Below are positions 6,604-57,392 of a stretch of 64,000 nt of DNA, in pieces (position 1 is the first letter of the stretch; every line of letters begins with the position of its first letter). The notes under the pieces were generated by a model, which was not told the DNA's origin, searched no databases, and was given only the letters and a program-made list of their open reading frames with translations. The stretch is from IMG/VR virus record IMGVR_UViG_3300045135_002615, positions 232,643-296,642 of that record; one strand, given 5' to 3'. The translations under genes were made by a program, and so were the position numbers.

Positions 6604-8214
6604 ATGTATCCACGTCGCCGTAGGCTGTCTCGCACAGCTTCATTTAATCGCGTTCGCACCGCTTCAACTTCATTACTTCGTCAGCTTCACAAGATTGCGA
6701 GTCCTCAAGAGATTCATCGCAAGTACAAGGGCATCGTCTCTCAGTTCATGTCTGATAAGTATACTGCGATGGACGATGCTATCCATGATACAATCTTTGA
6801 TCCTAATGAAAAGAAGCTAGGGACTCTCAGCCTTCGTGACCTCGTAGAGCTAAAGACTGAGCTCTCAGATGCGGTTGCCGAGCTTAATGATGCTTGGAAC
6901 TCAGCTAAAGCTAATGCTCCTAAGATCAAGGCGATGCTTCAGAGGGAGATGGGTAGTGCCTCCGAGGATGACCTTGAGGTTCTTGAGGGGTACTATGACG
7001 AAATCCAAAGTTTCCTTCGTAATGGACACCCTCTTGCAACATACAACCCTTATGCTGACTTCCTTGTGAAGATTGATGAGGAGATTGAGGAGAGGCGTAC
7101 CGAGGGTGAGGACGATGCTAGGTGGAGACGTGAGCTCACCGAACTAATTGCTGACTTTGAGGATAGCTTGGCAGAGCTTGAGGTCATGGATAGAGAGGTT
7201 CGTAGCTATGCCGATCTTCGCCCTCTTAAGATGGTGAAGGTTGATGTTGATATGCTCCTTGACACTACGGGACTCGGATCAAGTTTCCCTGATCGCTATT
7301 CACGGGGCATACTATCAAGTATAAATATGGACGCCGCTCGTGCTTCAATCGCAAAGAAGAGGCACGAGCTGCTCAACCTCCAAAAGGCACTTCCAAGTGT
7401 CAAGGTCGTAGAGCGTAAGCTCAAGGAGTTTGAGAGCGGTGTTCGTGAGAGACATGATCTCATCCGCCGTGCGAAAGAGGTTGATGCTCACACATGGCAG
7501 ATGAACATTGGTCCTGATGCAGAGAAACTCAAGGGGAAGACCGAACTACTAGAGGCTCGTTCATCAGCTGTCAGAGCTGCAATTACGCTCTATCTGAGAG
7601 ACCTCAAGATTTTCTCCATTACCCTAGCGGGTCAGATTACACGTCTTGAGAAGGTTTATGAGTCATCTCGTGATGTTGAGATCAATGCGAACCTTGCTTC
7701 TGAGAGGAAGATTAAGTATTTGAAGTCTTCTCTCAGAGACATTCAAACTGTCCTCAATCGTGGAGTAAAGTCCTCACGAGACCTTAAGGCTCTTACTGAG
7801 CGGTTTGAAAAGTTAGAGGCTCAGGCACAAGCAGGTGGGTCATCCGTGGTTCGTGAGATTGCACATCAGCTTCGTGATACAAAGGCAGCTCTCAAGTCCG
7901 TTGTGGTCGATGAGGGACTCATGGGTAAGTTTAGAGGTCTCTTCTCTCGCAAGGCTTCTTATGAGTACATGGCAGAGATGGATCGTGTAGCCTCTGATAT
8001 GGGTTACATGGGTTCAGACATAGACATGATGGCAGACGAGTGGATGTCTGACGATCTTGAGGCTGAATTCATGGGAGAGGATCTTGAGGCCGACTTCATG
8101 GCTGAGATGTATGTCGAAGGTGATGACTTCGAGGCTATGGAGGTGATGGCACCTCGCAGGGCTTCAATGAACCGTAGGGCTTCACGCCTCGCCCGTAGAC
8201 ATCTTAGGGGCTAA
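6604..8214 (+). CDS. Coiled-coil protein with Arg-rich R-x-A-S termini and Met/acidic tail; putative virion-internal protein
   Basis: 536-aa ORF; AGGAG SD; RTAS/KIAS at the N-terminus, RKAS/RRAS at the C-terminus. Confidence 0.75.
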   Translation: MYPRRRRLSRTASFNRVRTASTSLLRQLHKIASPQEIHRKYKGIVSQFMSDKYTAMDDAIHDTIFDPNEKKLGTLSLRDLVELKTELSDAVAELNDAWNSAKANAPKIKAMLQREMGSASEDDLEVLEGYYDEIQSFLRNGHPLATYNPYADFLVKIDEEIEERRTEGEDDARWRRELTELIADFEDSLAELEVMDREVRSYADLRPLKMVKVDVDMLLDTTGLGSSFPDRYSRGILSSINMDAARASIAKKRHELLNLQKALPSVKVVERKLKEFESGVRERHDLIRRAKEVDAHTWQMNIGPDAEKLKGKTELLEARSSAVRAAITLYLRDLKIFSITLAGQITRLEKVYESSRDVEINANLASERKIKYLKSSLRDIQTVLNRGVKSSRDLKALTERFEKLEAQAQAGGSSVVREIAHQLRDTKAALKSVVVDEGLMGKFRGLFSRKASYEYMAEMDRVASDMGYMGSDIDMMADEWMSDDLEAEFMGEDLEADFMAEMYVEGDDFEAMEVMAPRRASMNRRASRLARRHLRG

Positions 8215-8785
8215 GCCCAAACTCCCTTCGAGATACAGGCAGGTAGTCAAAGCCAGGTGACACGCTCTCCCCATCGGAGATCTTCTTGCCCTCTTGATCT
8301 ACCTTCATGTTAAAGGTCGCCTTTTCAGCACATGGGCTGAATGTGGCGACCTCTTCTATATTGTCCGCCCACGCCATGAGGTAGGTACTCCCCTCAAATG
8401 GATTACCCTTAAAGTCTGTGCGTAATCCATAAGCAAACACGGGGACTCCGAGTTCATCCGCAACCCGTGTTAAGTCATACACCTGTAGCTTATTCAAGAA
8501 CTGAGACTCATCTACGAATATGACCTTGAGCTCTCTTCGTGCATGCTCTTCAGACACTATCTCAAACAAAGAGCTGTGCTCTTTAAGGGGGGTGGCCTCA
8601 TGCTTAAAGCCCACCCTTGAAGCCACCTGAGCGACACCATCCCTTTTAGCTGCTATAGATGGTATGAGCATCATGAAAGGGATTGATCTCTCATTACAAG
8701 AGTGAGCCCTCATAAGGAGGTTTGCGGTCTTACCCGCATTGACTGTTGAGTAGATAAAGTTTAACAAGGTGACATCTCTCTCCAT
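8204..8785 (-). CDS. tdk: Thymidine kinase
   Basis: FIYSTVNAGKTANLL, IFVDESQF, AYGLRTDFKGNPFEGS..L..AD; true start may lie a few codons downstream. Confidence 0.9.
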   Translation of the reverse strand: MERDVTLLNFIYSTVNAGKTANLLMRAHSCNERSIPFMMLIPSIAAKRDGVAQVASRVGFKHEATPLKEHSSLFEIVSEEHARRELKVIFVDESQFLNKLQVYDLTRVADELGVPVFAYGLRTDFKGNPFEGSTYLMAWADNIEEVATFSPCAEKATFNMKVDQEGKKISDGESVSPGFDYLPVSRREFGLSP

Positions 8786-9387
8786 CCAAAATAGGATGAT
8801 ACTTTGTGGCGAACCTCTTGCACGAGGTTTTTTACTTTTTTACTATCCCACCCATATGTCCTAGCAATGTGTGAAGACTTCATCCCACCCATCATCGCGT
8901 CATACACTTTAAGGGCATCATCGGTGAAGCGACTTCTTACCTCTTCCATGATCATGTCATCCGAGGGGTCTTGGTCATAAGACAAGTCCATAGAGTGTGA
9001 GTGAGAGCTTGAGATGTCCTCCTCAACACCCAACATGGCTTTAGAGCTGTCTTTACGGTGTTTATTGATGACGTTCATTACGATGCAGTTCATCACCATG
9101 ACCACATAGGTTGAGAAAGCTGACTTCTCAGGGTCATAGGGACAAGAACCCTCATTACGGATCATAATCCCTTTGTAGACTTCTTGTAGGACATCTTCCG
9201 GATCAAGTCCTTCCTTAGATACGGAGTGGGCTTGTCTCTTATAGAAGATAAGGCGAACGTCTTGACTTCTTGTATCAAGGTCAATCCCTAGTTTGCGGGG
9301 TTTGACTTGATCAAAACTGAAGGATGCGATAGGAGTGATCCCGATTTGCCATTGACGTGTGGCTTCAATCCCTGAATAACTCGACAT
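8761..9387 (-). CDS. RNA polymerase sigma factor (sigma70 family, ECF/SigH-like size)
   Basis: Region 2-like DPEDVLQEVY..YDPEKSAFSTYV; C-terminal region 4-like HTH GMKSSHIARTYGWDSKKV. Confidence 0.8.
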   Translation of the reverse strand: MSSYSGIEATRQWQIGITPIASFSFDQVKPRKLGIDLDTRSQDVRLIFYKRQAHSVSKEGLDPEDVLQEVYKGIMIRNEGSCPYDPEKSAFSTYVVMVMNCIVMNVINKHRKDSSKAMLGVEEDISSSHSHSMDLSYDQDPSDDMIMEEVRSRFTDDALKVYDAMMGGMKSSHIARTYGWDSKKVKNLVQEVRHKVSSYFGWREMSPC

Positions 9388-12921: not shown

Positions 12922-13340
12922 TGATCTACAGGAGAGACGGCTTGATCTTCATGTCCATTAAGGACACCTATACGGGCTATTTGAAAGTAGCTAAGATACT
13001 CCCCACTGAGACCTCTTGGGGTGTCTTTGAACCCGCTATAGATGTGATTGAACCTTTGATACCTGAAGCCTCCCCAGAGGCACTGGATCGACTTTTACGA
13101 GGAGACCCGACCCCTTTTAGGAATACAAAGGGGTTGAGAGAGCCTCAAGGGTGTCTCAAGCTAATAGACACTGATCGCTATTGTGATGAGCAAGACACCT
13201 GTCTCTCTTACAACAAAACCTATTGCACTTTAGGACATCGTAAGATGCCTGATTGCTTCTCACCTGTTGCAGGTGATCAAATCCGCCCTCTTATCCTTGC
13301 TTGGAAAGAGGGTTTTTTCATTGTCAGGGAAAGGACATGA
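12921..13340 (+). CDS. Hypothetical protein with Cys cluster
   Basis: Five Cys in the C-terminal half. Confidence 0.65.
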   Translation: MIYRRDGLIFMSIKDTYTGYLKVAKILPTETSWGVFEPAIDVIEPLIPEASPEALDRLLRGDPTPFRNTKGLREPQGCLKLIDTDRYCDEQDTCLSYNKTYCTLGHRKMPDCFSPVAGDQIRPLILAWKEGFFIVRERT

Positions 13341-13996
13341 ACATGTTTAAGAGTGCTTCAAAGACCCCTCGTACCATGCGTAGAATTTATGAGGAGGTAG
13401 ACTCTCCTATGGGTGGTCCAGCTAATGAGAATGCGGACTACTTTGGTGAGATCACTGTCAGTGATAACCACATCTACCTCTATCGAGGGATCACACCTAA
13501 GTCTGTTATGGAGATGGGGATTGCCATCAAAACCATTAGTCAACAGATCGTCAACATGGTGACTGACCTTGACCTACCTTCAGCTCCACCTATCCATCTC
13601 CATATCAACTCAGGAGGTGGGTGTGCTTTCAGTGGACTTGCGGGTGCAAGTCATATTTTAGGTTCAGACATCCCTGTGTTCACTTATGTTGAGGGTTCTG
13701 CTGCATCAGCGGCGACCATTATGTCTTGTGTTGGAGCAAAGCGTTTCATCACCGAGCATAGCTTTATGTTGATCCATCAGATCAGCACTGGTGTGTGGGG
13801 TACATATGAGAACCTGAAGGACGAGAAGGAGTCTATGGATGCACTCATGGCTCAACTTGAGGGGATCTACTTGAAGAACACGAAACTCAAGAAGAAGGAC
13901 CTGAAAGAGCTGTTGAAGCGTGACCTATGGCTCAATGCAGATCAATGTTTAGAGAAGGGTCTGGTAGACGAGGTCATCAAGTACGAGAGGGTTTAA
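13337..13996 (+). CDS. clpP: ClpP-family serine protease
   Basis: IHLHINSGGG, GSAASAA (Ser), FMLIHQ (His), RDLWLNADQCLEKGLVDEVI. Confidence 0.9.
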   Translation: MNMFKSASKTPRTMRRIYEEVDSPMGGPANENADYFGEITVSDNHIYLYRGITPKSVMEMGIAIKTISQQIVNMVTDLDLPSAPPIHLHINSGGGCAFSGLAGASHILGSDIPVFTYVEGSAASAATIMSCVGAKRFITEHSFMLIHQISTGVWGTYENLKDEKESMDALMAQLEGIYLKNTKLKKKDLKELLKRDLWLNADQCLEKGLVDEVIKYERV

Positions 13997-14535
13997 AGAG
14001 GACACGCCTCATGTGAGGGGTCTTTCTCACCTGCGTAATAGACGGTGACCACATTAACCATAGACCCTTCAACTTCAAATACCACAATCAAGTCACCGAG
14101 TGCTTCTGCTCTCCACTTGAGTCTTTGTCCCATAAAGATACGCTCTTTGATCTGCTCGATGACCCTTGATCTCTTGTTGTAGTTCTGTCGAAGGTATCTA
14201 CCAAACAGGTTGAAGTAAGTCTTTAGGTCACCTATAGTCACACCTCTCTGATCCATACGGAACTGAGCGTGTGTGGTGATCTTCATCCTCTTGAATGTCT
14301 TATCCCCAACTCGTTCAAACTCTAGGTCATAGATATTATGAGTGTACGAGTCAGGGATGGCTTGTCCTTCTTGAACGATTCTCACAAGTTGCCTCTTTAG
14401 TTTAGGGTTTCGGATATTATCCTCGATCCTCCTCTTAGTGTGGCATACTCCGCCTGGGTATCCGAGTGGAGGGTTCAAGTCCGAGATACGCTCAAGTCGA
14501 GCGACCCTCATGATTAGTCGGTCTATCTTGTTCAT
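13993..14535 (-). CDS. DUF4258/RelE-like (BECR-fold) nuclease-like protein with N-terminal extension
   Basis: ITTHAQFRMDQRGVT..LIVVFE..VNVVTVYY. Confidence 0.6.
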   Translation of the reverse strand: MNKIDRLIMRVARLERISDLNPPLGYPGGVCHTKRRIEDNIRNPKLKRQLVRIVQEGQAIPDSYTHNIYDLEFERVGDKTFKRMKITTHAQFRMDQRGVTIGDLKTYFNLFGRYLRQNYNKRSRVIEQIKERIFMGQRLKWRAEALGDLIVVFEVEGSMVNVVTVYYAGEKDPSHEACPL

Positions 14536-14539
14536 TTTT

Positions 14540-14583
14540 TAGCTCCTTTATGTACTTAATGTGATGAATTCATAAAGGAGCTA
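14540..14583. promoter_or_regulatory. Symmetric bidirectional control element (13-bp inverted repeat)
   Basis: TAGCTCCTTTATG-N18-CATAAAGGAGCTA between divergent start codons. Confidence 0.75.
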
Positions 14584-14587
14584 TGAC

Positions 14588-16288
14588 ATGGACCCTATCG
14601 ACCGACTAATCTCAAGCCTCAACAAGAAGGTTATCCGTAAACTCGCCGCTGAAGACCTCCCTACCTTTGAGGAAGCGATCAAGGGAAAGACCTTCAAGAA
14701 CCCTAATACGGGTAATGACGTTCAGTTTGGATCACTCCCTGCCGAAGAGCAGAAGAAGATCCGTGCTGAATATGACAAGAAGGTGGAGGAGCTTGAAGGA
14801 GAGGGTAAGGGTAAGGGAGAGAAGAAGCCTCTCAAAAAGATGACCAAGGTTCAATTGCTTGATCAGCTTGAAGGGGATAAGGACTTCTCAGGGGTTGATC
14901 TCACTAAGTTTAAAGACTTTGATTGGTCAAGTGTGGATTTGAGGGGTGCTAACTTCTCAGGTTCAGACCTGACAGGTGCGTACTTTGGTGTTGGTTCTAG
15001 ACTCGAAGGAGCGAACTTTGAGGGTGCTAATCTTTCAGGTGTCGAGTTCAGAGGGAAAAAGGGTTATGGCGTGAGCCCGTACAGCGATACTCCAGATACT
15101 GTCCATAAAAACGTCAACTTCAAGGGTGCTAATCTTGAAGGTGCGGAGATGTCTTTTCTTCGTTTTGAAAATTCAGATTTAAGCGGTGCTAATCTAAAGG
15201 GTGCTGAGCTTGACGCGGTGATGATAGATAGAAAATGCACCGTAAGAGGTGCTGACTTTGAGGGTGCAACCTTTCATGCCTCCCAATTCAATGGCGTCAA
15301 TCTGAAGGGTGTGAACTTTGCGGGAGCAACCATAAAGTCTGGGGGTGGATATAATAACAGTAGAAGAACCTTCGACAGAGCGAACATCTCAGGTGCAGAC
15401 TTCTCAGGTGCAAACTTCGCCTTCGGTGACGCTTTTAGGTTTGGTGGTAACTTTGGGAAACCCGCCAAAATAAATGGAGCTAAGTTTAGATTTGATGTTC
15501 TAGAAAGTGTGGGAACTAAAGAATTTAAAGCATTTGGCTTTGATAAAGACAATCCTCCTGAAGGCTTGTCCGATAAGGTTCTACATAAAATGGTTGGTGG
15601 TAGGGAGTACCTAGAGTATAGGGAGGCTGAAGAAGATAAAGCTGAAGAAGCTAAAGCTAAGGCTGATGCGGAAGCCAAAGCTAAAGCTGATGAGGAAGCC
15701 AAAGCCAAAGCTAAAGCTGATGAGGAAGCCAAAGCCAAAGCTAAGGCTGATGAGGAAGCTAAAGCTAAGGCTGATGCTGAAGCCAAAGCTAAGGCTGATG
15801 CTGAAGCCAAAGCTAAGGCTAAAGCTGAAGCCAAAGCTAAGGCTGATGCTGAAGCCAAGGCTAAGGCTGATGAGGAAGCCAAAGCTAAAGCTAAGGCTGA
15901 TGAGGAAGCCAAAGCCAAGGCTAAGGCTGATGAGGAAGCCAAAGCTAAAGCTGAGGAAGAAGAGAAGATCAAAGAGAACTCAAAACGTCTTAAAGACCTT
16001 GAGTCTAAGATTAAAGCCGTTAAGAAGAAAGATGATCTCATTGACCTTGTGTCTGAGCTAGGTAGGATGAAGGGTCAACTCTCAAACGCTAAGTTTAAGG
16101 ACAAACTAGAGTCTGAGATGAAGGCTGTCGATAAAGCTGTACAAAACGCGAAAGAGAACACGTCTTTCACGGGTAGGATTAAGAGCTTCTTCGGTCTAGG
16201 TAAAAAGGCAAGGCTCAAGGAAGCCCGACTCTTGCTCAATGGACTTCAGGATGAGATCGAGCATCTCAAGAGGGACATCAACCGCTGA
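14588..16288 (+). CDS. Pentapeptide-repeat protein with Lys/Ala/Glu helical repeat
   Basis: Many A[ND][FL]xG pentapeptides; AKAKADEE/AKAKADAE tandem repeats. Confidence 0.85.
   Translation: MDPIDRLISSLNKKVIRKLAAEDLPTFEEAIKGKTFKNPNTGNDVQFGSLPAEEQKKIRAEYDKKVEELEGEGKGKGEKKPLKKMTKVQLLDQLEGDKDFSGVDLTKFKDFDWSSVDLRGANFSGSDLTGAYFGVGSRLEGANFEGANLSGVEFRGKKGYGVSPYSDTPDTVHKNVNFKGANLEGAEMSFLRFENSDLSGANLKGAELDAVMIDRKCTVRGADFEGATFHASQFNGVNLKGVNFAGATIKSGGGYNNSRRTFDRANISGADFSGANFAFGDAFRFGGNFGKPAKINGAKFRFDVLESVGTKEFKAFGFDKDNPPEGLSDKVLHKMVGGREYLEYREAEEDKAEEAKAKADAEAKAKADEEAKAKAKADEEAKAKAKADEEAKAKADAEAKAKADAEAKAKAKAEAKAKADAEAKAKADEEAKAKAKADEEAKAKAKADEEAKAKAEEEEKIKENSKRLKDLESKIKAVKKKDDLIDLVSELGRMKGQLSNAKFKDKLESEMKAVDKAVQNAKENTSFTGRIKSFFGLGKKARLKEARLLLNGLQDEIEHLKRDINR
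15641..15960 (+). repeat. Coding tandem repeat, 24/30-bp units
   Basis: gaagccaaagctaaggctgat(gag/gct) units encoding EAKAKAD[EA]. Confidence 0.9.
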
Positions 16289-39046: not shown

Positions 39047-39574
39047 ATGGAGCTAAATGAAAGAGTCGCAAAAAGGTACTTGTCTGCCTACCGCAAAGGG
39101 GACATTGAGATCAAAGTGGATACTCCAGAGGATCGTGATGCCAACTTTTCGGTGGGGCTTTATCGAGGTGACTCTCATGTGGGGTGGTGCGAAGCACATG
39201 TGGAGGCATACACAATACATGAACTCGAAGATTTTAATTGTTACAAGGACATCATGTCTGTGACCGCAACATGGTTAGCGGACATGGAAGAAGCGACCAA
39301 CGCAGTGACGGGTGTCGAAGGTATCTTGGTTGTAGAGGTTGTCTCTAGTGAATTAGAGGAGTCTCTTCAAGGTAAGAAGTGTGGCTATCAAATGTACCTG
39401 AAACTCATCCAAGAGGTATACAAAGAGTACGGCAGAATACCTTTTGTGTTCATCCCGAACTACTGTCACAATAGGTCTACCTCTGATGAGGCTCTAAGGG
39501 TATGGGCATCATTCGCCCGTAAATACCCTTCTGAAGGGGACGTTATTCTGATCACTCGTTACCCGAACCGATAA
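39047..39574 (+). CDS. GNAT-fold-like protein with RVAKRY N-terminal leader
   Basis: VVSSELEESLQGKKCGYQMY (motif A-like Q-G-x-G) and STSDEALRVW. Confidence 0.55.
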   Translation: MELNERVAKRYLSAYRKGDIEIKVDTPEDRDANFSVGLYRGDSHVGWCEAHVEAYTIHELEDFNCYKDIMSVTATWLADMEEATNAVTGVEGILVVEVVSSELEESLQGKKCGYQMYLKLIQEVYKEYGRIPFVFIPNYCHNRSTSDEALRVWASFARKYPSEGDVILITRYPNR

Positions 39575-40859: not shown

Positions 40860-40914
40860 TTTTTTATTCCTTTTATTGTGTCCTTCTATGGCAACTTCCA
40901 TTTGGAGAATGTAT

Positions 40915-41295
40915 ATGAGAAGAACAGCTAGTGAGATGATTAACGACCTTGAGATCAGGGTAGCCCGACTTGAGTCAAAGAAGGCTTTTTTTGGACTCTT
41001 CAGGAAGAGAGACGTAGTAGACGAACTGGTTGAGCAGATACTTAAGACTCAAGGAGTGGAGATCAATAAGATTAAGAGAAAGGAAATCAGTAGAGACTCT
41101 ACTTTGGTGAAGGGTAGGCTTGTCAATGGCGTAGAGTTCGAGATTTATCATGTTTTCCACCCTGTAGACTATGATATGGGTAGGTTTGAAGTTAAGTTCG
41201 ATGGTCGCATGGTCTATAGAGACGTATATAAGAATGGGCTTGGTAATTTCCTAGATCATAATGACATCGAGAAGGATATAAAGCCTTTTAAATAA
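40915..41295 (+). CDS. Hypothetical protein with RRTAS..RVARLE leader
   Basis: MRRTASEMINDLEIRVARLESKKAFFGLFRKR; GGAG SD. Confidence 0.7.
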   Translation: MRRTASEMINDLEIRVARLESKKAFFGLFRKRDVVDELVEQILKTQGVEINKIKRKEISRDSTLVKGRLVNGVEFEIYHVFHPVDYDMGRFEVKFDGRMVYRDVYKNGLGNFLDHNDIEKDIKPFK

Positions 41296-48042: not shown

Positions 48043-48573
48043 CTAAGATGCCCGATACCCTTCGCGGAAGAAATCTAACACCATGTCCAACAAGGTTGTG
48101 AAGCTCCTCGGAGAGTCTACATTTAGAATCAGATGGTTTACGATCTCGCCCTTGCTGTACTTATGGAAGGTAGCGGTGAACCTCGCATCGTTCGGTGAGT
48201 GAGATGGGACTAGAATCAAAGCGGTGGGGTCGAAGTACAAGCAAAGGGTATAGACATCCGACCCCTCAGCGTGTCGAGCTACTCCGACCACAGTCAAGTC
48301 CTCATCTTTGTAGATATCCTGGTCGAACTCAAGTACCTTGTCTCGTCCCGTTTCGTCTTTAAGTTTGCGTCCGTATGGGTGTGCGAGGGTAGGGGAGAAC
48401 CCTGTGTAGGTTGATAGGTTACACTCAACCATCGCTTCCCACCACGCTTGTTGGAGGTTCTCTGACATTTTATTTGTTTGACAGAAGACCTCGTAGTTGT
48501 CGAACCTATGCCACCAAGAACCTTCACGGGCGACTCTCTTACCCTCTACAATCTCAGTCCAATTGTTTGACAC
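48043..48573 (-). CDS. GKR-family paralog
   Basis: WTEIVEGKRVA N-terminus; SFTTLLDMVLDFFRE C-terminus. Confidence 0.75.
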   Translation of the reverse strand: MSNNWTEIVEGKRVAREGSWWHRFDNYEVFCQTNKMSENLQQAWWEAMVECNLSTYTGFSPTLAHPYGRKLKDETGRDKVLEFDQDIYKDEDLTVVGVARHAEGSDVYTLCLYFDPTALILVPSHSPNDARFTATFHKYSKGEIVNHLILNVDSPRSFTTLLDMVLDFFREGYRAS

Positions 48574-48991
48574 TCTTTTGCTCTCCTAAGTAGTATTGTC
48601 TAAACCCATCAAGTATCTCGTCTAGTAATTTTGAACCCACCCACCCATTGTGTTTGATTCGGTGTATACGAGTGTGTGATGACTTTCGAGCTCCTTGGAC
48701 CCACTCCATTCGGAGCTCTACATCAAGTTGATGCTCATACACTCTCATGAAGTAGGTCGTTCCTTCTGAATGTATGAGCATTGCCCCTACGATCTTTGCA
48801 TTAGGTATGAAGATATAGTCATTCTTGAGCAAGTCGCTTTTCTCGGATAGCTCAACCGTGAGCTTTTGAGGGAACTCAATCCCTATAAACAAGGGTACGA
48901 AGTGAGCCTCAGCTAGTGCATCAGGGAGTTCCTCCCATCTTGAAAAGTTTATGGCTCTCCTCTTACCGTCTATGATTTTAGTATACGTCAC
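48554..48991 (-). CDS. GKR-family paralog
   Basis: GTG start, YTKIIDGKRRA; LLDEILDGFRQYY. Confidence 0.7.
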   Translation of the reverse strand: MTYTKIIDGKRRAINFSRWEELPDALAEAHFVPLFIGIEFPQKLTVELSEKSDLLKNDYIFIPNAKIVGAMLIHSEGTTYFMRVYEHQLDVELRMEWVQGARKSSHTRIHRIKHNGWVGSKLLDEILDGFRQYYLGEQKSVKQLD

Positions 48992-49451
48992 TTGACTCAA
49001 CCTCTCTCCAATAGTCTCGGAAGATTTCAAGCAGCTCATCTAGGTACAAGGTGAACGACCCGTCAGAGAGGACGAATGTTCTCTCCATGTACATCATAGA
49101 CTCTCGCTCAGGTCTCCAACTGAGTTTGATCAGTCTGCCCTGACCTAGATATACTCTCAGCAAGAACACCTTTTTATTGTGTGTCAGCTTCATTGCTGCA
49201 AATATCCTTTGACTTGGATCAAGTGTCATCGCATCAACATGAGCCCATAAATACCTTTTACTGAGGTCAGCCAGCTTAATAGGGAACTCGATGTCAGGTG
49301 TAATGATCTTAAAGTTGGCTTCTTCAAGGGCTTCTTTTAGAGCGATGTGGATTCTAATTGCCACACCTTTCCTGAACACTTGATGGCTGTTCCACAGTAG
49401 TCCTTGGATGGCAACCCGCTTACCATCTACAATCTCAGTCCACTTACTCAT
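48978..49451 (-). CDS. GKR-family paralog
   Basis: MSKWTEIVDGKRVA; SFTLYLDELLEIFRDYWR. Confidence 0.75.
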   Translation of the reverse strand: MSKWTEIVDGKRVAIQGLLWNSHQVFRKGVAIRIHIALKEALEEANFKIITPDIEFPIKLADLSKRYLWAHVDAMTLDPSQRIFAAMKLTHNKKVFLLRVYLGQGRLIKLSWRPERESMMYMERTFVLSDGSFTLYLDELLEIFRDYWREVESSDVY

Positions 49452-49867
49452 TGGTTAGCTCTCCAAAATGTCCTGATTGAGTCAAGCAACTCGTTCATGT
49501 ATGATGTGAAAGTCTCTTCACGATAAATAGTAGCCTTATACGCCTCACTGATTGGTCTTCCTTTGTCCCACTCATCCATGATCATTGAGTGACGTTGACC
49601 CCCTCCGAAGTAAACTCTGATTCGATAGTCACGTCCCTCATGCATGAGTTGTCCATAATAGATTAGAGTCCCGTACTGACTCTTCTCCTCGTTGAGTGTC
49701 TGACCCTCAATAAGATCTCGGAAGTGACACTCTGCCAATGCCCCCCTAACCGACTCATGGAAAGAGTACTGCCAATTGCCAATACTGACCGAGAACATGT
49801 CACTATCCCAATCAAGATACTTTTTGGCTCTCCGCTTCCCGTCTACAATCTCAGTCCACTTACCCAT
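49448..49867 (-). CDS. GKR-family paralog
   Basis: MGKWTEIVDGKRRA; TFTSYMNELLDSIRTFWR. Confidence 0.75.
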   Translation of the reverse strand: MGKWTEIVDGKRRAKKYLDWDSDMFSVSIGNWQYSFHESVRGALAECHFRDLIEGQTLNEEKSQYGTLIYYGQLMHEGRDYRIRVYFGGGQRHSMIMDEWDKGRPISEAYKATIYREETFTSYMNELLDSIRTFWRANQ

Positions 49868-50300
49868 TGATCTTCCTCCAAAAGTCCCTAAAAGTCTCAA
49901 AGGTCGCGTCCAACAGCTCCGTTAAAGAGTCATAGTTCCCAACTACAATCAAAGAAGACCCCTCCTTCCTCGTGTAGACTAAGATGGTATGGGTGTCCCC
50001 ATTAGGATCGTAAAAAATACAGACCCTGTATACGATATGCTCAATGATCCTCTGATTGTAGGAGACCATGATTAAGTCGTTGTAGTTTGGTGCGTCTGCG
50101 ATCTCTTTGCGATACCAATCTACCTGCGATACTCTTTCGGCTTCAAAAAGGTACGCATCAAAACCCAACTCCTCAAAGGCTTGGTTTACCCACCAAGTGG
50201 TGTCGTGGATATAGCTATCTTTAGACACCTGTAGCTTCCCGCCCTCCCACTTTAGGTCGCACACAGCGACCCGTTTTCCGTTTTTTATTTGTGTGTACAT
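49860..50300 (-). CDS. GKR-family paralog
   Basis: MYTQIKNGKRVA; SLTELLDATFETFRDFWR. Confidence 0.75.
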   Translation of the reverse strand: MYTQIKNGKRVAVCDLKWEGGKLQVSKDSYIHDTTWWVNQAFEELGFDAYLFEAERVSQVDWYRKEIADAPNYNDLIMVSYNQRIIEHIVYRVCIFYDPNGDTHTILVYTRKEGSSLIVVGNYDSLTELLDATFETFRDFWRKING

Positions 50301-53055: not shown

Positions 53056-53104
53056 GCCATAGTTCCTTTATAAAGGTCGATATAGGTCTAATAAGGGGTT
53101 GACT

Positions 53105-54481
53105 ATGATCGCAACACTACATGGGATAGCATCTGCTTCAAGGGGGCTCTCAAGAGTTATTACAAATAACCTAGTCCTTCACTACAACACCTTTAACCCT
53201 AGCTCATATGTTAAAGGTCAAGGGACCACAATCAACGACCTCTCAGGGAACGGACTACATGGGACAATCGTTGGAAGTCCTCCATGGTCTACCAACTACT
53301 TTTCGTTCTCTAATGACTACATCACCTCCGCGAACTTAGCACCTTCTCTGACTGAAGTACACACCGCAGAACTATGGGTTTACCCTACAGGTAATGGTGT
53401 ACTCTTACAAGCTAATGCTCAAGCTACACCGAACACTAGCTACCATCACTCCACCATAGAGATTGTAGCAGGCAAACTAGAATTCGGTCTGTGGAACGGC
53501 TCAGGTATCACCTCTACAGGTCCAACCTCTACTATCTCTTTCAATCAATGGCATCAAGTAGTCCTTACTTACGATGGCTCAATCATCAGAGGATATCTTG
53601 ATGGTTCGTTCGCGGGTTCCGTCAATGTCACATGGGACTCTCCAGAGGACAGCACGGGTGTTTTCTACTACAACTTCGGTTATAGAGACACCACATCTCA
53701 AGGTGATGGGACTGACTTTGATGGTCGTTTTGGGATTATGAGGATCTATAGTGTTGCCTTCTCCCTACAGGCTATCCAACAGAACTACAATGCGGTCACA
53801 GGAAACGTCAGTGACTTAGTGTCGGATACCCTCAGACTCTATTATGACCCTTCTCTCTCAGCGTCATATAGCTCACCGAGTAGCCTCATTTATAATCTTG
53901 CTCCCAATACAAACACAGGCACTCTCTCTAATGTCTCCGCCAATGGTACTTACCTCACCTTTAACGGCTCAAGTTCTCAAGTCTCTGTCCCTGACTCTTC
54001 TATCTTAGAACCTGGTTCATCTAACTTCACAATAGAAGCATGGGTAAGGATACATAGCTTTGGGAGTACAATGGTGATTGCAGGTAAGTTTGATAACGGG
54101 GGCTTGGCAGCGGATGTCTCTTATTCACTACGGGTCAACGCATCAGGTGTCTTAAGATGTGAGGTAGGAGATGGCACAGGCTCACTAGATAGTCCTCTCT
54201 ATCAGGCTACAACCAACACATGGTATCAAGTCGTAGGTGTGATAGATAACACGAACAATCAGCTCAAGCTCTATATCAATGGTGTATCTCAAGGCACACC
54301 TACCACCATGAGCTATACGAGTATCTTGAATAGTGCGAACAATCTGTATCTAGGTAGCTACAACAACGGGGAATATTCTCAGTACCTTGATGGGGACTTA
54401 GGGGTAGTGAGGGTCTATCAAAGGGCTTTGACTGATGCGGAGGTGTTGGCGAACTACAACTACGACAGATCCAAGTATTGA
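53105..54481 (+). CDS. Tandem LamG/concanavalin A-like lectin protein
   Basis: LVLHY..DLSGNGLHGT, NQWHQVVLTYDG, FTIEAWV, NTWYQVV, VRVYQRALTDAEVLANYN; two LamG repeats. Confidence 0.85.
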   Translation: MIATLHGIASASRGLSRVITNNLVLHYNTFNPSSYVKGQGTTINDLSGNGLHGTIVGSPPWSTNYFSFSNDYITSANLAPSLTEVHTAELWVYPTGNGVLLQANAQATPNTSYHHSTIEIVAGKLEFGLWNGSGITSTGPTSTISFNQWHQVVLTYDGSIIRGYLDGSFAGSVNVTWDSPEDSTGVFYYNFGYRDTTSQGDGTDFDGRFGIMRIYSVAFSLQAIQQNYNAVTGNVSDLVSDTLRLYYDPSLSASYSSPSSLIYNLAPNTNTGTLSNVSANGTYLTFNGSSSQVSVPDSSILEPGSSNFTIEAWVRIHSFGSTMVIAGKFDNGGLAADVSYSLRVNASGVLRCEVGDGTGSLDSPLYQATTNTWYQVVGVIDNTNNQLKLYINGVSQGTPTTMSYTSILNSANNLYLGSYNNGEYSQYLDGDLGVVRVYQRALTDAEVLANYNYDRSKY

Positions 54482-55259: not shown

Positions 55260-55534
55260 TAGTTATTCTTCTTAGAAATGATGACTGAGAACCCTCGTGC
55301 AGAGAGCTCTGCTTCAAGATCATGCTCACTTAGGTCATCGTTCTTGTTAGAGGAGGTCAACAGGAGGGCTACATATTTGAGCTCTCCGATAGGGTTAGAA
55401 CGCTTTACTCGATAGCCGAGGTCCTCACCGATCATCTCTATGGTATGGGCTACCTTACTTTCTCTACAGACCACTTGGTATCCAAGCGAGACTTTGTCTA
55501 GAAACAATGGGTTGTTTAAGTGGCATACAGACAT
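55259..55534 (-). CDS. Hypothetical protein (paralog of 54939-55187)
   Basis: AAAGGA SD; shared pattern. Confidence 0.7.
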   Translation of the reverse strand: MSVCHLNNPLFLDKVSLGYQVVCRESKVAHTIEMIGEDLGYRVKRSNPIGELKYVALLLTSSNKNDDLSEHDLEAELSARGFSVIISKKNN

Positions 55535-55584
55535 GCGTTGTCCTTTCTTTAGATTATTTGTTTATACCAGAGCAACTTGGTTAT

Positions 55585-55612
55585 ATTATTTGTGACCATG
55601 GTCACAAATAAT
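55585..55612. promoter_or_regulatory. Perfect 28-bp palindrome with CRP-type TGTGA-N6-TCACA core
   Basis: ATTATTTGTGACCATGGTCACAAATAAT between divergent genes. Confidence 0.7.
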
Positions 55613-55634
55613 CTTTGTATACAAGGAGGTTATC

Positions 55635-55982
55635 ATGTCCACATACACAACCATTCAAGAAGGTGAGCGTGTTTGGGTTTTAGACAACTCAGAGGTTCTG
55701 AGCTTCTTCTTGTTGCAAAACACTTATGAGAGAGATGGTGGTTTAGGTATTTCACCCTTCGTCTACCGTTGGTTGAAGGACGTGCTCTTAGAGATCGGGT
55801 TTAAGAGGTCTCTGACCTCAAGGTTCATACTCTATATTGGAGACCTTGAGGGAGTGCGTGTAGAAGCGGATTTCACAGACAAAGGGGTGTTTTTACGAAA
55901 CGAGACTAGGACTATAGAGCTAGTCAAGTTGGAAATGTTGTTTTCATTGATAAGGCTTTTATGGAGGGAGTATGCTATGTGA
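55635..55982 (+). CDS. Divergent GKR-family paralog
   Basis: YTTIQEGERVW, VLLEIGF, LIRLLWRE; AAGGAGG SD. Confidence 0.65.
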   Translation: MSTYTTIQEGERVWVLDNSEVLSFFLLQNTYERDGGLGISPFVYRWLKDVLLEIGFKRSLTSRFILYIGDLEGVRVEADFTDKGVFLRNETRTIELVKLEMLFSLIRLLWREYAM

Positions 55983-56012
55983 CTCTATAAGAGACATGAA
56001 AGGACTTCCTAT

Positions 56013-57392
56013 ATGGCAACAAGAGCACAAAGACTAAAAAAGATACATGACCTACATGAACAAATCGCAAGAGAAACACCTCAGACAGAAAGTCAGCTTG
56101 TGCGTCGGCTCATGTTCGCCAATGGGATGACTGAGGCAGATGTCAGGGCAACTTCTAACTCTTCACTGACTGAGTTTGGTCGTCTAGTTTATAGGGCGTA
56201 CCCTGACAATAAGTACTACTTTAGGTTGGTCTTCACCTTCGGTGTTAAGATCGGGTTCGCCCCCGAAGGTAGATATGGAGGCATCCCTTCACTATCTTCG
56301 ATCAACACTCTTTACTACAAGCTCAAGCGGGAGTCCAAAGCTCAGACGAAGAAGGCTTCTATAGATTTGTTCTACGCAGTAGATTCATGGATGGAGATGA
56401 ATGCCCAAGACATTGACTACATGTTAGTGAAAACACCCCTTTCTTCGTCATCCGGTAAGATTGTCACACATGGTCTACTTAAGCCCATGGTCATTGCTTT
56501 ATGTGATAATCTCAACCAAGCGTTCCCTCAAGGGGTATTCAGTGTTGTCTTATCTACCATTTATTTTGACGCTTCTGAGGGTCATGAGCGTATCGCGTCT
56601 AAAAAAAAAAGTGAAGATGAGGTAGAGGAGGAGGCACTAGAGTTGTTGGCTGACAATGTCCCTAGTTTGCCTATTCCTTCTTCTTTAAAGTCTGATCTGA
56701 AGAAGGACGTAGTAGGTAATAAGAACCTAGTGTCAAAGGGTGTAATCCACACATGGAAACCGTTGAAGGTTCGTGTTGTCAAGGACACCTGGCTCATCCT
56801 TTTGAATGGTACTCCTGAAGAGAAAGCGGCATTTAAGAGAGGCTTTCTAAAATCTGAAGAAAAAGACGAGATGTCTCACGTCCTTGAGGGTTTAGACGCT
56901 CAGCTTGCACTTGCTATTAAGAAAATGCAGGGTCTTCAAACGAGTGATAAAGAGCTAAAAATCAAGAGGGCAGAGCAGGCAGGGTCACTGTTGAAGGGTA
57001 GCCTTCAAGCATCCGGGATGATTGTTTTATTTGCGTTTATTTTCTTGTACTTTAAAGGCGATCCCTACGCAGAGAGTGTTGTAGGGGGTGTGAGTGGAGG
57101 TCTCACGTTTATCTTTAAAGCTATTATCATGGCGGTAAAAGGGATTTCAGGTCCCTTTTCGATTTACTTTTTAGCCTCCACCTTCTATATACCTTTCAGT
57201 AAGACACTCGGCTATCGAGAGGGCACACTCAAGATGCTGAGAGACCTTAAAGATAAGCTCAAGACCAATACCTTTGGGCTCATGCACTACTTGTCAGACA
57301 AGTTTAATATGTTCAAGGGAGGGGTGGTGAAACTCGTAGGGAACGTGTACGAGAGGGTAGTTCGTAAGTTCAGGCGAGCTTCTTATTGCTAA
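56013..57392 (+). CDS. Hypothetical membrane protein with KKAS/RIAS/RRAS motifs
   Basis: Hydrophobic helices in the C-terminal third; AAAGGA SD. Confidence 0.7.
   Translation: MATRAQRLKKIHDLHEQIARETPQTESQLVRRLMFANGMTEADVRATSNSSLTEFGRLVYRAYPDNKYYFRLVFTFGVKIGFAPEGRYGGIPSLSSINTLYYKLKRESKAQTKKASIDLFYAVDSWMEMNAQDIDYMLVKTPLSSSSGKIVTHGLLKPMVIALCDNLNQAFPQGVFSVVLSTIYFDASEGHERIASKKKSEDEVEEEALELLADNVPSLPIPSSLKSDLKKDVVGNKNLVSKGVIHTWKPLKVRVVKDTWLILLNGTPEEKAAFKRGFLKSEEKDEMSHVLEGLDAQLALAIKKMQGLQTSDKELKIKRAEQAGSLLKGSLQASGMIVLFAFIFLYFKGDPYAESVVGGVSGGLTFIFKAIIMAVKGISGPFSIYFLASTFYIPFSKTLGYREGTLKMLRDLKDKLKTNTFGLMHYLSDKFNMFKGGVVKLVGNVYERVVRKFRRASYC

What the first reader, a model, noticed from the sequence alone, without database searches (positions are those of the whole stretch)
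6604..57392. Unrelated proteins share [RK]-x-A(S) motifs next to MinD-like amphipathic helices: candidate protease-matured capsid cargo system
Seen: gene 6604 has N-terminal SRTAS/VRTAS/HKIAS and C-terminal GLMGKFRGLFSRKAS..RRAS..RRAS. Gene 14588 has DPIDRLI..RKLAA and SFTGRIKSFFGLGKKA. Gene 14535 begins NKIDRLIMRVARLE; gene 40915 MRRTAS..RVARLESKKAFFGLFRKR; gene 39047 ERVAKRYLSA; gene 56013 has KKAS, RIAS and a terminal VVRKFRRAS. Their cores differ completely (coiled coil, pentapeptide repeat, RelE-like, GNAT-like, membrane), and most carry the late motif. Established: large-phage inner-head proteins (T4, phiKZ) have propeptides removed by the prohead protease at short motifs; the B. subtilis MinD membrane-targeting helix ends ..AKIKSFFG... 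Inference: basic propeptides target diverse effectors into the head, and cleavage after [KR]-x-A would leave the FFGL/FRGLF helix at a free terminus for membrane binding after ejection.
Basis: partly seen in the sequence, partly recalled or inferred. Interest (0 to 1): 0.8.

Follow-up and report, generated by a model that had tools for sequence, protein, structure and literature searches.

The report
Phage capsid-cargo leader and cleavage motif
In this uncultured 297-kb phage and its close relatives, dozens of unrelated proteins share a roughly 25-residue helical N-terminal leader bounded by [RK]-x-A-S motifs; these motifs are most concentrated in the head scaffold and head protease, so they are probably a tag-and-cut system for loading proteins into the capsid, though no cleavage or packaging has been shown.

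Summary
The window is the last 64 kb of a 296,642-bp IMG/VR jumbo phage related to Bacillus phage G.

**Motif.** [RK]xAS is enriched genome-wide (118 observed, 52.7 expected, z 8.8). It is the top gapped motif not derived from repeats. Two sister genomes repeat the result (z 10.4 and 12). Within the window the signal is marginal and rests on gene 6604.

**Carriers.** The four richest proteins are the acidic scaffold, an unstructured 781-aa protein, the head-module protease (T4 gp21/herpesvirus assemblin fold) and window gene 6604. Across 53 scaffold orthologues the count is 320 against 33.5 expected. Three sites are fixed just upstream of an invariant C-terminal tail.

**Leader.** The tetrapeptide belongs to a helical leader (consensus MRR[ST]ASE..R.LE.R[IV]ARLE[RK]QA[SAG]) on 18 to 35 otherwise unrelated proteins per genome. 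Window gene 40915 carries it clearly; the minus-strand gene starting at 14535 carries a degenerate copy. LR745208 and phage G have different leaders that also end in [KR]-x-A plus a small residue.

**Reading.** The best interpretation is a capsid-targeting leader cut by the prohead protease. The MinD-like membrane helix is not supported statistically, and ClpP is an unlikely protease. Nothing has been shown biochemically.

The parts
6604..8214 (+). 536-aa coiled-coil protein. It is the fourth most [RK]xAS-rich protein of the genome and a candidate scaffold-like or internal head protein.
   Evidence: It has 7 sites against 0.69 expected, Poisson p 8e-6. Its acidic Met-rich C-terminal repeat matches the scaffold's repeat (BLASTP E 6e-7; DNA similarity). 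No homologue was found in four relatives, and no PHROG or above-cut-off Pfam family.
6631..6702 (+). Three N-terminal sites of gene 6604: RTAS (aa 10), RTAS (aa 18) and KIAS (aa 30).
7930..8184 (+). C-terminal block of gene 6604: FRGLF (aa 443-447), RKAS (449), RVAS (461), an acidic repeat, RRAS (518) and RRAS (524).
40915..40986 (+). Canonical N-terminal leader of gene 40915-41295: MRRTAS, an amphipathic helix and RVARLESKKA.
   Evidence: Leader HMM i-E 3.4e-9. The G001 orthologue keeps the leader and the MRRSAS site.
40987..41295 (+). Cargo body of gene 40915. It begins FFGLFRKR directly after the presumed cut site.
   Evidence: No Pfam family.
14488..14535 (-). Degenerate leader helix MNKIDRLIMRVARLER at the N-terminus of gene 13993-14535.
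   Evidence: Leader HMM i-E 0.012. The G001 and G002 orthologues carry ..LERRVADLE.. and ..LMQRVAMLERQAD...
13993..14487 (-). Body of that gene, a possible RelE-superfamily-like domain.
   Evidence: Pfam DUF4258, E 8e-4, 20.1 bits, below the cut-off of 25.
14588..16288 (+). Pentapeptide-repeat protein with a weak leader-like N-terminus (MDPIDRLI..RKLAAE) and IKSFFGLGKK near its C-terminus. It is not a demonstrable member of the leader family.
   Evidence: Pfam Pentapeptide E 3e-27. It is not hit by the leader HMM. Its C-terminal helix is paralogous to genome ORF 133255-134568, whose N-terminus is MRQRKAS.
56013..57392 (+). 459-aa protein with hydrophobic segments. It has KKAS (aa 113), RIAS (aa 193) and a terminal RRASYC.
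   Evidence: 3 sites against 0.38 expected, p 0.007. No orthologue and no Pfam family.
39047..39574 (+). 175-aa protein with MELNERVAKRYLSA. It belongs to a different small N-terminal family and is not part of the leader/[RK]xAS system on present evidence.
   Evidence: It clusters with three G001 proteins that begin MK.Y[QE]RVA.RY. No Pfam family.
13301..13996 (+). ClpP-family protease. It is the rival candidate protease and lies outside the head module.
   Evidence: Pfam CLP_protease E 6e-26. ClpP-type PHROGs E 1e-40. No ClpX in the genome.

Best explanation
The motif and the helix belong to one system that loads proteins into the phage head and then trims them.

Shown:
- A clade of uncultured jumbo phages puts a conserved amphipathic leader of about 25 aa on 18-35 otherwise unrelated proteins per genome. 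The leader is usually N-terminal and occasionally C-terminal. Its consensus is M-R-R-[ST]-A-S-E-h-h-x-x-L-E-x-R-[IV]-A-R-L-E-[RK]-Q-A-[SAG]. This genome mostly uses the flavour MRHLTASQKIAQLE.RIA.LEKQA.
- The leader is bounded by [RK]-x-A-[S/A/G].
- The same tetrapeptide is massively over-represented in the acidic scaffold, in a disordered 781-aa protein, and in linkers on both sides of the catalytic domain of the head-module protease.

Inferred:
- The leader helix docks cargo onto the scaffold core or inner capsid surface during procapsid assembly.
- The prohead protease (T4 gp21/herpesvirus assemblin fold) then cuts at [RK]-x-A|S. This detaches cargo from the leader, trims itself, chops the scaffold into exportable peptides, and releases the scaffold from its capsid-binding C-terminal tail, as the herpesvirus M-site cut does.
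- The freed cargo stays in the head and is presumably ejected with the DNA.

In the window:
- Gene 6604 is a scaffold-like substrate.
- Gene 40915 is a canonical leader cargo.
- The gene starting at 14535 is a degenerate leader cargo.
- Gene 56013 is a possible substrate.
- Genes 14588 and 39047 are unproven.
For: 1. The motif is real and clade-wide: own genome z 8.8, G002 z 10.4, G001 z 12.
2. It is linked to head assembly.
   - A PHROG head-maturation-protease hit (E 6e-15) lies between a portal-sized gene and the scaffold, in synteny with Tunturi_5 and phage G.
   - Its model's best PDB matches are T4 gp21 (Z 8.8) and VZV protease (Z 8.5), then HCMV and KSHV proteases.
3. The top four carriers are the scaffold (9 vs 0.51), the 781-aa protein (8 vs 0.81), the protease (6 vs 0.37) and gene 6604 (7 vs 0.69). 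The orthologue of the 781-aa protein tops the list in G001 and G002.
4. In 53 distinct scaffold orthologues there are 320 sites against 33.5 expected. Three sites are positionally fixed 15-50 aa before the near-invariant tail LSKLWESAPDVSKFFG, while the acidic middle diverges.
5. The protease has R[VIT]A[SA] at aa 25 in 32 of 35 orthologues. It has K.AS sites just after the catalytic domain, and a comparable VA-S position is present in phage G and Tunturi_5. All of these sites fall in low-pLDDT linkers.
6. Leader census and behaviour:
   - Hits: 22, 35 and 18 in the three genomes, and 12 in G003.
   - Of 65 cargo proteins scanned against Pfam, 5-7 match any family, and only 10 pairs show any similarity between their bodies.
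   - Conserved residues use many synonymous codons, so selection acts on the protein.
   - [RK]xA[SAG] follows the helix within 14 aa in 36 of 66 cases, against 2.1 background.
7. Leaders are more alike within a genome than between genomes (0.74-0.77 vs 0.47-0.64). An 80%-identical cargo carries each genome's own leader type, which implies a common partner.
8. Leader genes lie directly downstream of the capsid gene in all three genomes.
9. More distant relatives have different leaders with the same ending. LR745208 has TLRSKLIRLAHENPALRPQLLPLLKEA[AG] on 8 proteins, one of them inside its head module. Phage G has MKRLIKK[AS][SN] on 6 proteins, including head-module gp17.
10. Precedents are the T4 capsid-targeting sequence with gp21 (PMC9026906) and the herpesvirus R and M sites ending A|S or A|T, with a capsid-binding scaffold tail (PMC4498786).
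Against: - No virion proteomics, N-terminal sequences or protease assays exist for this clade. Cleavage, the scissile bond and packaging are all inferred.
- An [RK]xAS only 2-6 residues from the initiator Met (MRRSAS) is an odd place for a cleavage site. It may be a binding determinant instead.
- Site conservation between orthologues is only modestly above controls: 33% against 11-25%.
- The structural Z-scores lie in the range the tool calls 'middling'. Foldseek gave nothing significant, and a PDB profile search found no protease.
- Leader genes share an upstream CTTTTAT-like motif in 11 of 18 cases, against 49 of 310 for other genes. The head genes lack it, so co-expression with head assembly is unproven.
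- The internal scaffold copy of the helix (RLARLERLAS) is weak (HMM E 0.012) and is not conserved in G002.
- Several motif-bearing proteins look like membrane proteins or enzymes (PhoH, exonuclease), where the sites may be incidental.
Confidence: 0.6

Rival explanations
1. The motif or leader is a degradation or processing signal for the phage ClpP-like protease encoded in the window (13301-13996). It would control protein turnover in the infected cell rather than head maturation.
For: - A well-conserved ClpP homologue is present (Pfam E 6e-26; 80% identical in G001).
- ClpP-family enzymes serve as prohead proteases in some phages, as the PHROG labels show.
- Several carriers end in basic tails.
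- The main text of PMC12484599 (read) reports ClpP and ClpX in phage G particles.
Against: - No ClpX is encoded.
- The ClpP gene sits among nucleotide-metabolism and replication genes, not in the head module.
- The motif peaks in the scaffold and in the other protease, flanking its catalytic domain. A cytoplasmic degron would not predict this.
Confidence: 0.1
2. [RK]-x-A-S is a basophilic Ser phosphorylation (R-x-x-S) or other modification site. The leader would be a regulatory coiled coil unrelated to packaging.
For: The register R-x-x-S fits basophilic kinases. RRxS strings occur in genes 6604 and 56013.
Against: - No Hanks-type kinase is found in the genome.
- RR.S is barely enriched (z 1.9).
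- Ala before the Ser looks required. In the distant relatives [RK]xSS and [RK]xGS are not enriched; these two patterns were not counted in this genome or in G001/G002.
- After leaders, the position following Ala can be G or A, which cannot be phosphorylated.
- Distant relatives keep [KR]-x-A but not the Ser.
Confidence: 0.07
3. One reading: cleavage exposes an FFGL/FRGLF amphipathic helix that targets ejected effectors to the host membrane, as the MinD membrane-targeting sequence does.
For: - About six leader proteins across three genomes start their mature part with G[LI]FD[FI]F[KR] or FFGLFRKR.
- Gene 14588 and its paralogue carry IKSFFGLGKK.
- Several carriers have hydrophobic segments.
Against: - The helix is not enriched: 10 of 66 against 7.0 +/- 2.4, and FFG z 1.75.
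- Most leader cargo lacks it.
- The best-conserved copy is the scaffold's extreme C-terminus, and scaffolds are not ejected.
- It could equally be a capsid-binding peptide.
Confidence: 0.15
4. The leader is a generic coiled-coil oligomerisation or recombination cassette that spreads among accessory genes without any link to the capsid. The motif enrichment in head proteins would be a separate phenomenon.
For: - Leader genes are scattered over the genome.
- They share a promoter-like motif that head genes lack.
- Within-genome homogenisation could come from gene conversion.
Against: - Conservation is at the protein level, with abundant synonymous change.
- The leader is bracketed by the same tetrapeptide that marks the scaffold and protease.
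- Leader genes flank the capsid gene in three genomes.
- Unrelated leaders in LR745208 and phage G end in the same [KR]-x-A.
Confidence: 0.08

Closest known systems
T4 capsid-targeting sequence (CTS) on internal proteins IPI-III and Alt, removed by prohead protease gp21 at (L/I)-x-E
   Same: - A short terminal propeptide is shared by otherwise unrelated proteins.
- The propeptide ends in the protease motif.
- The protease itself and the scaffold carry multiple sites.
- Propeptides can be N- or C-terminal.
- Cargo genes turn over quickly (PMC9026906).
- The protease fold match to gp21 has Z 8.8.
   Different: - The leader is about 25 aa with a heptad helix, not 10 aa.
- The motif is [RK]-x-A-[SAG], not (L/I)-x-E.
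- There are 18-35 tagged genes per genome rather than a handful.
- The capsid protein shows no propeptide; it is 292 aa with no site.
- Nothing has been shown experimentally.
Herpesvirus assemblin / scaffold system (R-site and M-site cuts, scaffold C-terminal tail binding the major capsid protein)
   Same: - Same protease fold class: VZV Z 8.5, HCMV 6.2, KSHV 6.1.
- Candidate cut after Ala before Ser, with a specificity residue two positions upstream.
- One site immediately after the catalytic domain.
- Sites a few tens of residues before a conserved hydrophobic scaffold C-terminus (PMC4498786).
   Different: - The protease and main scaffold are separate genes.
- The P3 residue is basic, not V/L/I.
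- There is no cargo leader system in herpesviruses.
- The scissile bond here is assumed by analogy.
phiKZ / 201phi2-1 / SPN3US head proteins processed by gp175/gp245 at (S/A/G)-x-E
   Same: Jumbo phage with many head proteins carrying propeptides that contain redundant sites (PMC9026906, PMC10052503).
   Different: Different lineage (phage G-like, small HK97-type capsid protein), a different motif, and a single conserved leader sequence instead of diverse propeptides.
Encapsulin cargo-loading peptides
   Same: A short terminal peptide on diverse cargo, recognised by the interior of an HK97-fold shell.
   Different: Encapsulin peptides are not removed by a protease. There is no sequence resemblance, and here a scaffold and a protease are present.
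MinD membrane-targeting amphipathic helix
   Same: The resemblance was recalled, not tested.
   Different: The helix is not terminal in 14588, not enriched, and absent from most carriers.

Membership tests
Prohead (capsid maturation) protease of the gp21 / HK97 gp4 / herpesvirus assemblin fold (genome 213912-215354, outside the window) | Sequence-profile match to a head-maturation protease family | tested here: met
   phrog_18299 'head maturation protease', E 5.8e-15 over aa 108-262. tblastn hits to the annotated proteases of Tunturi_5 and Gordonia phages. No Pfam protease family reached threshold.
Prohead (capsid maturation) protease of the gp21 / HK97 gp4 / herpesvirus assemblin fold | Assemblin-type fold | tested here: inconclusive
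   The VIA-align wide search puts T4 gp21 (Z 8.8) and VZV protease (Z 8.5) first, with HCMV and KSHV proteases also listed. However, Z is near the tool's noise ceiling, and Foldseek's best protease hit was E 0.21.
Prohead (capsid maturation) protease of the gp21 / HK97 gp4 / herpesvirus assemblin fold | Gene placed between portal and scaffold/capsid genes | tested here: met
   The order is a portal-sized 829-aa gene, a 180-aa gene, the protease, the scaffold, the decoration gene and the capsid gene. The same order holds in Tunturi_5 and phage G.
Prohead (capsid maturation) protease of the gp21 / HK97 gp4 / herpesvirus assemblin fold | Catalytic Ser/His residues and proteolytic activity | not testable with these tools
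   Invariant or near-invariant H130, S181, S247 and H207 exist in 35 orthologues. They were not mapped onto a catalytic triad, and no activity was measured.
T4-type capsid-targeting propeptide system | One terminal peptide shared by otherwise unrelated proteins | tested here: met
   66 N-terminal leader proteins in three genomes. Only 10 pairs show any similarity between their bodies, and of 65 scanned against Pfam 5-7 match any family.
T4-type capsid-targeting propeptide system | Propeptide ends at the motif that also marks the scaffold and the protease | tested here: met
   [RK]xA[SAG] lies within 14 aa after the helix in 36 of 66 cases, against 2.1 background. Scaffold orthologues have 320 sites against 33.5 expected. 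Protease sites are conserved.
T4-type capsid-targeting propeptide system | Tagged proteins are found in heads with the propeptide removed | not testable with these tools
   The clade is uncultured. The supplementary proteomics tables of the phage G paper are not held, and the phage G structure paper is not held.
Herpesvirus-type scaffold release (M-site) | Conserved capsid-binding C-terminal tail preceded by protease sites | tested here: inconclusive
   The tail ..LSKLWESAPDVSK[FYIV]F[G] is near-invariant in 53 orthologues and is preceded by three fixed sites. Binding to the capsid protein and cleavage were not tested.
MinD-like membrane-targeting sequence | Terminal amphipathic helix that recurs with the motif more often than chance | tested here: not met
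   FFG z 1.75. 10 of 66 against 7.0 +/- 2.4 after leaders. In 14588 the helix is about 30 aa from the C-terminus.
ClpXP degron | Cognate unfoldase present and motif located on turnover substrates | tested here: not met
   No ClpX match in the genome. The motif peaks in head-assembly proteins.

The most novel reading that the evidence does not exclude
A widespread clade of uncultured huge phages devotes 6-9% of its genes to proteins carrying one genome-specific, co-evolving helical address tag. The tag would load them into the capsid, and an assemblin-like protease with herpesvirus-like (x-A|S) specificity would remove it. On this reading the virion delivers dozens of fast-evolving effectors with the DNA: pentapeptide-repeat DNA mimics, toxin-like domains and membrane proteins. 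Related lineages (LR745208, phage G) would have swapped the tag but kept the cut site. This would be the largest known phage protein-delivery repertoire and a ready-made encapsidation tag.
Probability: 0.4. Interest if true: 0.85.

Novelty: new variant of a known kind. Interest (0 to 1): 0.7.

Why it matters
Propeptide-guided loading of proteins into phage heads is known in detail only for T4 and the phiKZ group. In both, the cut follows a glutamate, and the tag is either 10 aa long or not conserved.

Here sequence statistics alone reveal three new things in the phage G-like lineage, which includes the largest cultivated phage and many environmental huge phages:
- a different cut motif in the herpesvirus register;
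- a long, conserved, genome-specific helical tag;
- an unusually large set of tagged genes.

If confirmed, the finding would have several uses:
- It gives a simple rule for predicting virion-packaged and ejected proteins (likely anti-defence effectors) directly from metagenomic genomes.
- It ties phage and herpesvirus maturation closer together at the level of substrate specificity and scaffold release.
- It offers a candidate tag for packaging foreign proteins.

It can be tested now in phage G, where six proteins begin MKRLIKK[AS].

Tried and rejected
**Chance or composition.** Rejected by per-protein shuffles, zone-preserving shuffles and an unbiased pattern scan.

**A DNA-level repeat or restriction-site artefact.** Rejected. 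Ser, Arg and Ala codons vary freely at conserved leader residues.

**Homologues of gene 6604 and of the scaffold by single-protein scans of IMG/VR.** Nothing found. Gene 6604 was also absent from four related genomes and from Tunturi_5, phage G and LR745208.

**PHROG and Pfam scans of about 70 proteins.** Almost all motif carriers are orphans.

**PDB profile search with the protease alignment.** No protease found.

**Foldseek against PDB.** Nothing significant.

**ESM Atlas for the 781-aa motif-rich protein.** Its model is essentially disordered and uninformative.

**Literature.** No paper describing this leader or motif was found. The phage G structure/proteome paper and the megaphage paper's supplements are not held.

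**The same motif genome-wide in distant relatives.**
- Weak in LR745208, Tunturi_5 and phage G (z 2.5-2.8).
- Tunturi_5 instead over-represents K.AA (89 vs 40.6).

**The leader HMM in those three genomes and in four subclade-external IMG/VR contigs.** No hits.

**The idea that the scaffold carries a conserved copy of the leader helix as its docking partner.** Only weakly true in this genome, and not conserved.

**First structure job.** I reran it without them.

Full report
**What the window is.** The 64-kb window is bases 232,643-296,642 of a 296,642-bp IMG/VR virus record. The record has 47% G+C and is estimated about 95% complete. Megablast of a 10-kb stretch of the window found no near-identical GenBank phage. 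By capsid protein and protease its relatives are:
- the uncultured 485-kb phage LR745208 (capsid protein 88% identical);
- Tunturiibacter phage Tunturi_5 (47%);
- Bacillus phage G (38%);
- cluster-C-type mycobacteriophages.

IMG/VR holds hundreds of contigs whose capsid protein is 87-97% identical. I laid the whole genome in the Python box and called 328 ORFs covering 95% of it.

**Checking the observation.**
- Across the proteome [RK]xAS occurs 118 times against 52.7 +/- 7.4 in per-protein shuffles (z 8.8). R.AS alone is 61 against 23.7.
- The reverse pattern is not enriched. [RK]xAA is depleted, and [RK]xAT and [RK]xAG are near expectation.
- In an unbiased scan of all a.bc patterns, R.AS ranks directly behind the patterns produced by pentapeptide repeats, and K.AS is also high.
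- Enrichment holds in the first 60 aa (32 vs 11.6), the last 60 aa (28 vs 9.8) and the interior (58 vs 30.4), using shuffles that preserve each zone's composition.
- It survives removal of the four richest genes and of paralogues (88 vs 49.2 and 81 vs 48.2).
- In the window alone the excess is marginal (18 vs 9.4). It disappears without gene 6604 (11 vs 8.7).

**The amphipathic 'FFG' half of the observation does not hold statistically.**
- FFG occurs 17 times against 10.6 expected.
- Independent cases are few. The 14588 helix is a paralogue of one in genome ORF 133255-134568.

**Where the motif concentrates.** PHROG scans located the head module outside the window, in genome coordinates:

| Genome coordinates | Product | Evidence |
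|---|---|---|
| 210857-213346 | portal-sized gene, 829 aa | position and size only |
| 213368-213910 | 180-aa gene | none |
| 213912-215354 | protease, 480 aa | phrog_18299, E 6e-15 |
| 215369-217036 | acidic scaffold-like protein, 555 aa | composition, position |
| 217188-217775 | decoration-like gene | position |
| 217796-218674 | capsid protein, 292 aa | phrog_2522, E 1e-51 |

The same gene order is seen in Tunturi_5 and phage G.

Ranked by Poisson probability, the four most motif-rich proteins are:
- the scaffold, 9 sites against 0.51 expected;
- a 781-aa protein at 138126-140471, 8 against 0.81, whose Atlas model is essentially disordered;
- the protease, 6 against 0.37;
- window gene 6604, 7 against 0.69.

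Gene 6604 also shares the scaffold's acidic, methionine-rich repeat (DNA similarity).

**Comparative test on the scaffold and protease.**
- From the 80 IMG/VR loci I extracted 53 distinct scaffold orthologues that share 30-50% identity with this genome's scaffold. They hold 320 [RK]xAS sites against 33.5 expected.
- Their last 50 residues follow a fixed plan: KKAS-[YF]-RP, then R[QK]A[SA]-VKTLG, then IS[RK].AS, then the near-invariant tail LSKLWESAPDVSK[FYIV]F[G].
- In 35 protease orthologues, R[VIT]A[SA] at residue 25 is kept in 32. K.AS sites recur just after the catalytic domain. A VA-S at the corresponding place is present in phage G and Tunturi_5.
- The AlphaFold model is confident for residues about 40-265. 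It is disordered exactly where these sites lie: residues 1-33 and 266-332.
- Its best structural matches among 48,161 PDB representatives are T4 gp21 (Z 8.8) and varicella-zoster protease (Z 8.5). HCMV and KSHV proteases are also listed.
- Foldseek alone was not significant.

This layout has one site right after the protease domain and further sites shortly before a conserved hydrophobic scaffold terminus. It mirrors the herpesvirus R- and M-sites, which are cut after Ala before Ser or Thr and which release the scaffold from the capsid protein (PMC4498786).

**The larger unit: a shared leader.** The contexts of the terminal sites showed a recurring R[IV]A.LE. That regex occurs as follows:

| Genome | Observed | Expected |
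|---|---|---|
| Own genome | 25 | 1.0 |
| G001 (375 kb) | 36 | 1.4 |
| G002 (290 kb) | 19 | 1.0 |
| LR745208 | 3 | 1.3 (chance level) |

- A profile built from these segments finds 22, 35 and 18 copies in six-frame translations of the three genomes. It finds none in LR745208, Tunturi_5 or 300 kb of phage G.
- It finds 12 copies in G003 and none in four contigs whose capsid protein is only 88-91% identical.
- The copies sit at the very N-terminus, directly after a Shine-Dalgarno-like AGGAG, on 66 proteins. A few sit at the C-terminus of small proteins encoded next to the head module (genome 209404-209811 and 218962-219216).
- Consensus in G001: MRR[ST]ASE[VI]IRNLE.R[IV]ARLE[RK]QA[SGA]. In G002: MRTASEVLRSLE.RIARLE. 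In this genome mostly MRHLTASQKIAQLE.RIA.LEKQA. Window gene 40915 uses the G001-like form.
- Hydrophobic residues fall at a 3-4-3 spacing, as in an amphipathic coiled-coil helix (read directly from the sequence).
- After the final LE, the next residues are R/K (46 of 66), then any residue, then A (38 of 66), then S/A/G (39 of 66).
- A [RK]xA[SAG] lies within 14 aa in 36 of 66 cases, against 2.1 in control windows. 41 of 66 have such a site in the first eight residues.
- Conserved residues use many synonymous codons, including both serine codon families, so conservation acts on the protein.
- The cargo bodies are almost all orphans. Of 65 scanned against Pfam, two have pentapeptide repeats and one a WGR domain. 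Only ten pairs show any similarity between their bodies.
- Leaders are more alike within a genome than between genomes. An 80%-identical cargo pair carries each genome's own leader flavour. This points to co-evolution with one partner per genome.
- A degenerate DNA pattern for the leader hits at least 120 stretches in IMG/VR. The protein database holds unnamed relatives only.

**Other lineages.** Unbiased clustering of N-termini found two further leaders, requiring similarity in the first 50 aa with unrelated remainders:
- LR745208 has TLRSKLIRLAHENPALRPQLLPLLKEA[AGM] on eight proteins. One of them lies between its scaffold and capsid genes.
- Phage G has a short MKRLIKK[AS][SNE] on six proteins, including gp17 in its head module and gp38. 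The composition-based expectation is 0.0015.

The leaders differ, but each ends in [KR]-x-A plus a small residue. This is what one would expect if the protease specificity is the conserved element. Tunturi_5 over-represents K.AA instead.

**Mechanism proposed.** The shown and inferred steps are set out under the best explanation. In brief, the leader helix would dock cargo to the scaffold core or inner shell. The head-module protease would then cut at [RK]-x-A|S. This would free the cargo, trim the protease itself, fragment the scaffold and the disordered 781-aa protein, and detach the scaffold from its capsid-binding tail.

The T4 CTS/gp21 system is the closest functional precedent (PMC9026906), and the herpesvirus scaffold is the closest for the site layout (PMC4498786).

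**Verdict on the six named genes.**

| Gene | Verdict |
|---|---|
| 6604 | Strong substrate candidate, scaffold-like |
| 40915 | Canonical leader cargo; its orthologue keeps the leader |
| 13993-14535 (minus strand) | Degenerate leader; orthologues also carry the helix |
| 56013 | Possible substrate (p 0.007) |
| 14588 | Pentapeptide protein with only a weak leader-like start; its paralogue begins MRQRKAS |
| 39047 | Belongs to a different small N-terminal family, not demonstrably part of the system |

**Rivals.**
- *ClpP.* The window's ClpP-like gene is a real protease. It lies among thymidine kinase, sigma factor and primase genes, has no ClpX partner, and would not explain the motif pattern in the head module.
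- *Phosphorylation.* Ala is needed before Ser, G or A is accepted after leaders, and there is no Hanks-type kinase.
- *Membrane helix.* It lacks statistical support, but it remains possible for a handful of proteins.

**Limits.**
- Nothing here shows cleavage, the scissile bond, packaging or ejection.
- Orthologous site conservation is only moderately above controls (33% vs 11-25%).
- The fold match is borderline.
- Leader genes share a CTTTTAT-type upstream motif in 11 of 18 cases, against 49 of 310 for other genes (Fisher p 4e-5). The head genes lack it, so the timing relative to head assembly is unknown.

Noticed in passing
window 16355-25774 and 25831-35172 (+): Two adjacent giant ORFs of 3139 and 3113 aa. 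The second starts with a Pfam Mtd_N domain (major tropism determinant N-terminus, E 1e-10), so these are probably huge tail-fibre or receptor-binding proteins. Orthologues in G001 and G002 are 32-60% identical.
   Followed up: partly
window 48043-48573, 48978-49451, 49448-49900 (-); genome 24933-25391 and 25388-25873: A second N-terminal family, M..(K)WTEIV[DEN]GKR.A.., on five small proteins whose remainders did not match each other. It may be another shared N-terminal module or a small paralogous family.
   Followed up: no
upstream of many genes, e.g. window 6535-6603, 14536-14587, 40840-40914: A promoter-like heptamer family (CTTTTAT / TTTTATA / TTTATAG) is 8-13-fold enriched 25-75 nt upstream of starts. 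It precedes 60 of 328 genes and 11 of 18 leader genes, but not the portal-to-capsid genes.
   Followed up: partly
genome 138126-140471 (locus L013:3126-5471), outside the window: A 781-aa protein predicted to be largely disordered, with a conserved N-terminus and a conserved C-terminus ..LFGGFEV. It and its orthologues are the most [RK]xAS-rich proteins in G001 (9 sites) and G002 (10 sites). It is possibly a second scaffold or internal core protein.
   Followed up: partly
genome 1078-3981, 227325-229325 and 229884-230993 (outside the window): A different N-terminal pattern, M.[DN]FL..P..F...R[IVLY]AS, followed by ..L.[KR]IA..Q[FY], on five proteins with hydrophobic segments. It may be a second leader type for membrane-active proteins.
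   Followed up: no
LR745208 (loci L039-L063) and phage G (loci L064-L078): Lineage-specific leaders: TLRSKLIRLAHENPALRPQLLPLLKEA on 8 LR745208 proteins and MKRLIKK[AS] on 6 phage G proteins. Tunturi_5 instead shows K.AA as its most enriched pattern apart from one rare Cys pattern (89 vs 40.6).
   Followed up: partly
whole proteome of own genome, G001 and G002: [RK]xAA is significantly depleted (z -2.7 to -3.8) while [RK]xAS is enriched, as if near-cognate sites were avoided.
   Followed up: no
window 13301-13996 (+): A ClpP-family protease (Pfam E 6e-26) with no ClpX in the genome. It is 80% identical in G001. Its role is unknown.
   Followed up: partly
genome 224336-226252 (locus L018:14336-16252), outside the window: A DNA methyltransferase ORF with a central insertion of about 250 aa that matches PHROGs otherwise seen inside ribonucleotide reductase genes. 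It starts with Cys and ends ..SHNT, so it is possibly an intein. The RNR large subunit (genome 192434-195031) also matches in two separated stretches.
   Followed up: no
window 1744-3159 (-), 8761-9387 (-), 53099-54481 (+): A GroEL-like chaperonin (PHROG E 4e-24), a sigma-factor-like gene, and a protein with two Laminin_G/concanavalin-like lectin domains (E 8e-43).
   Followed up: no
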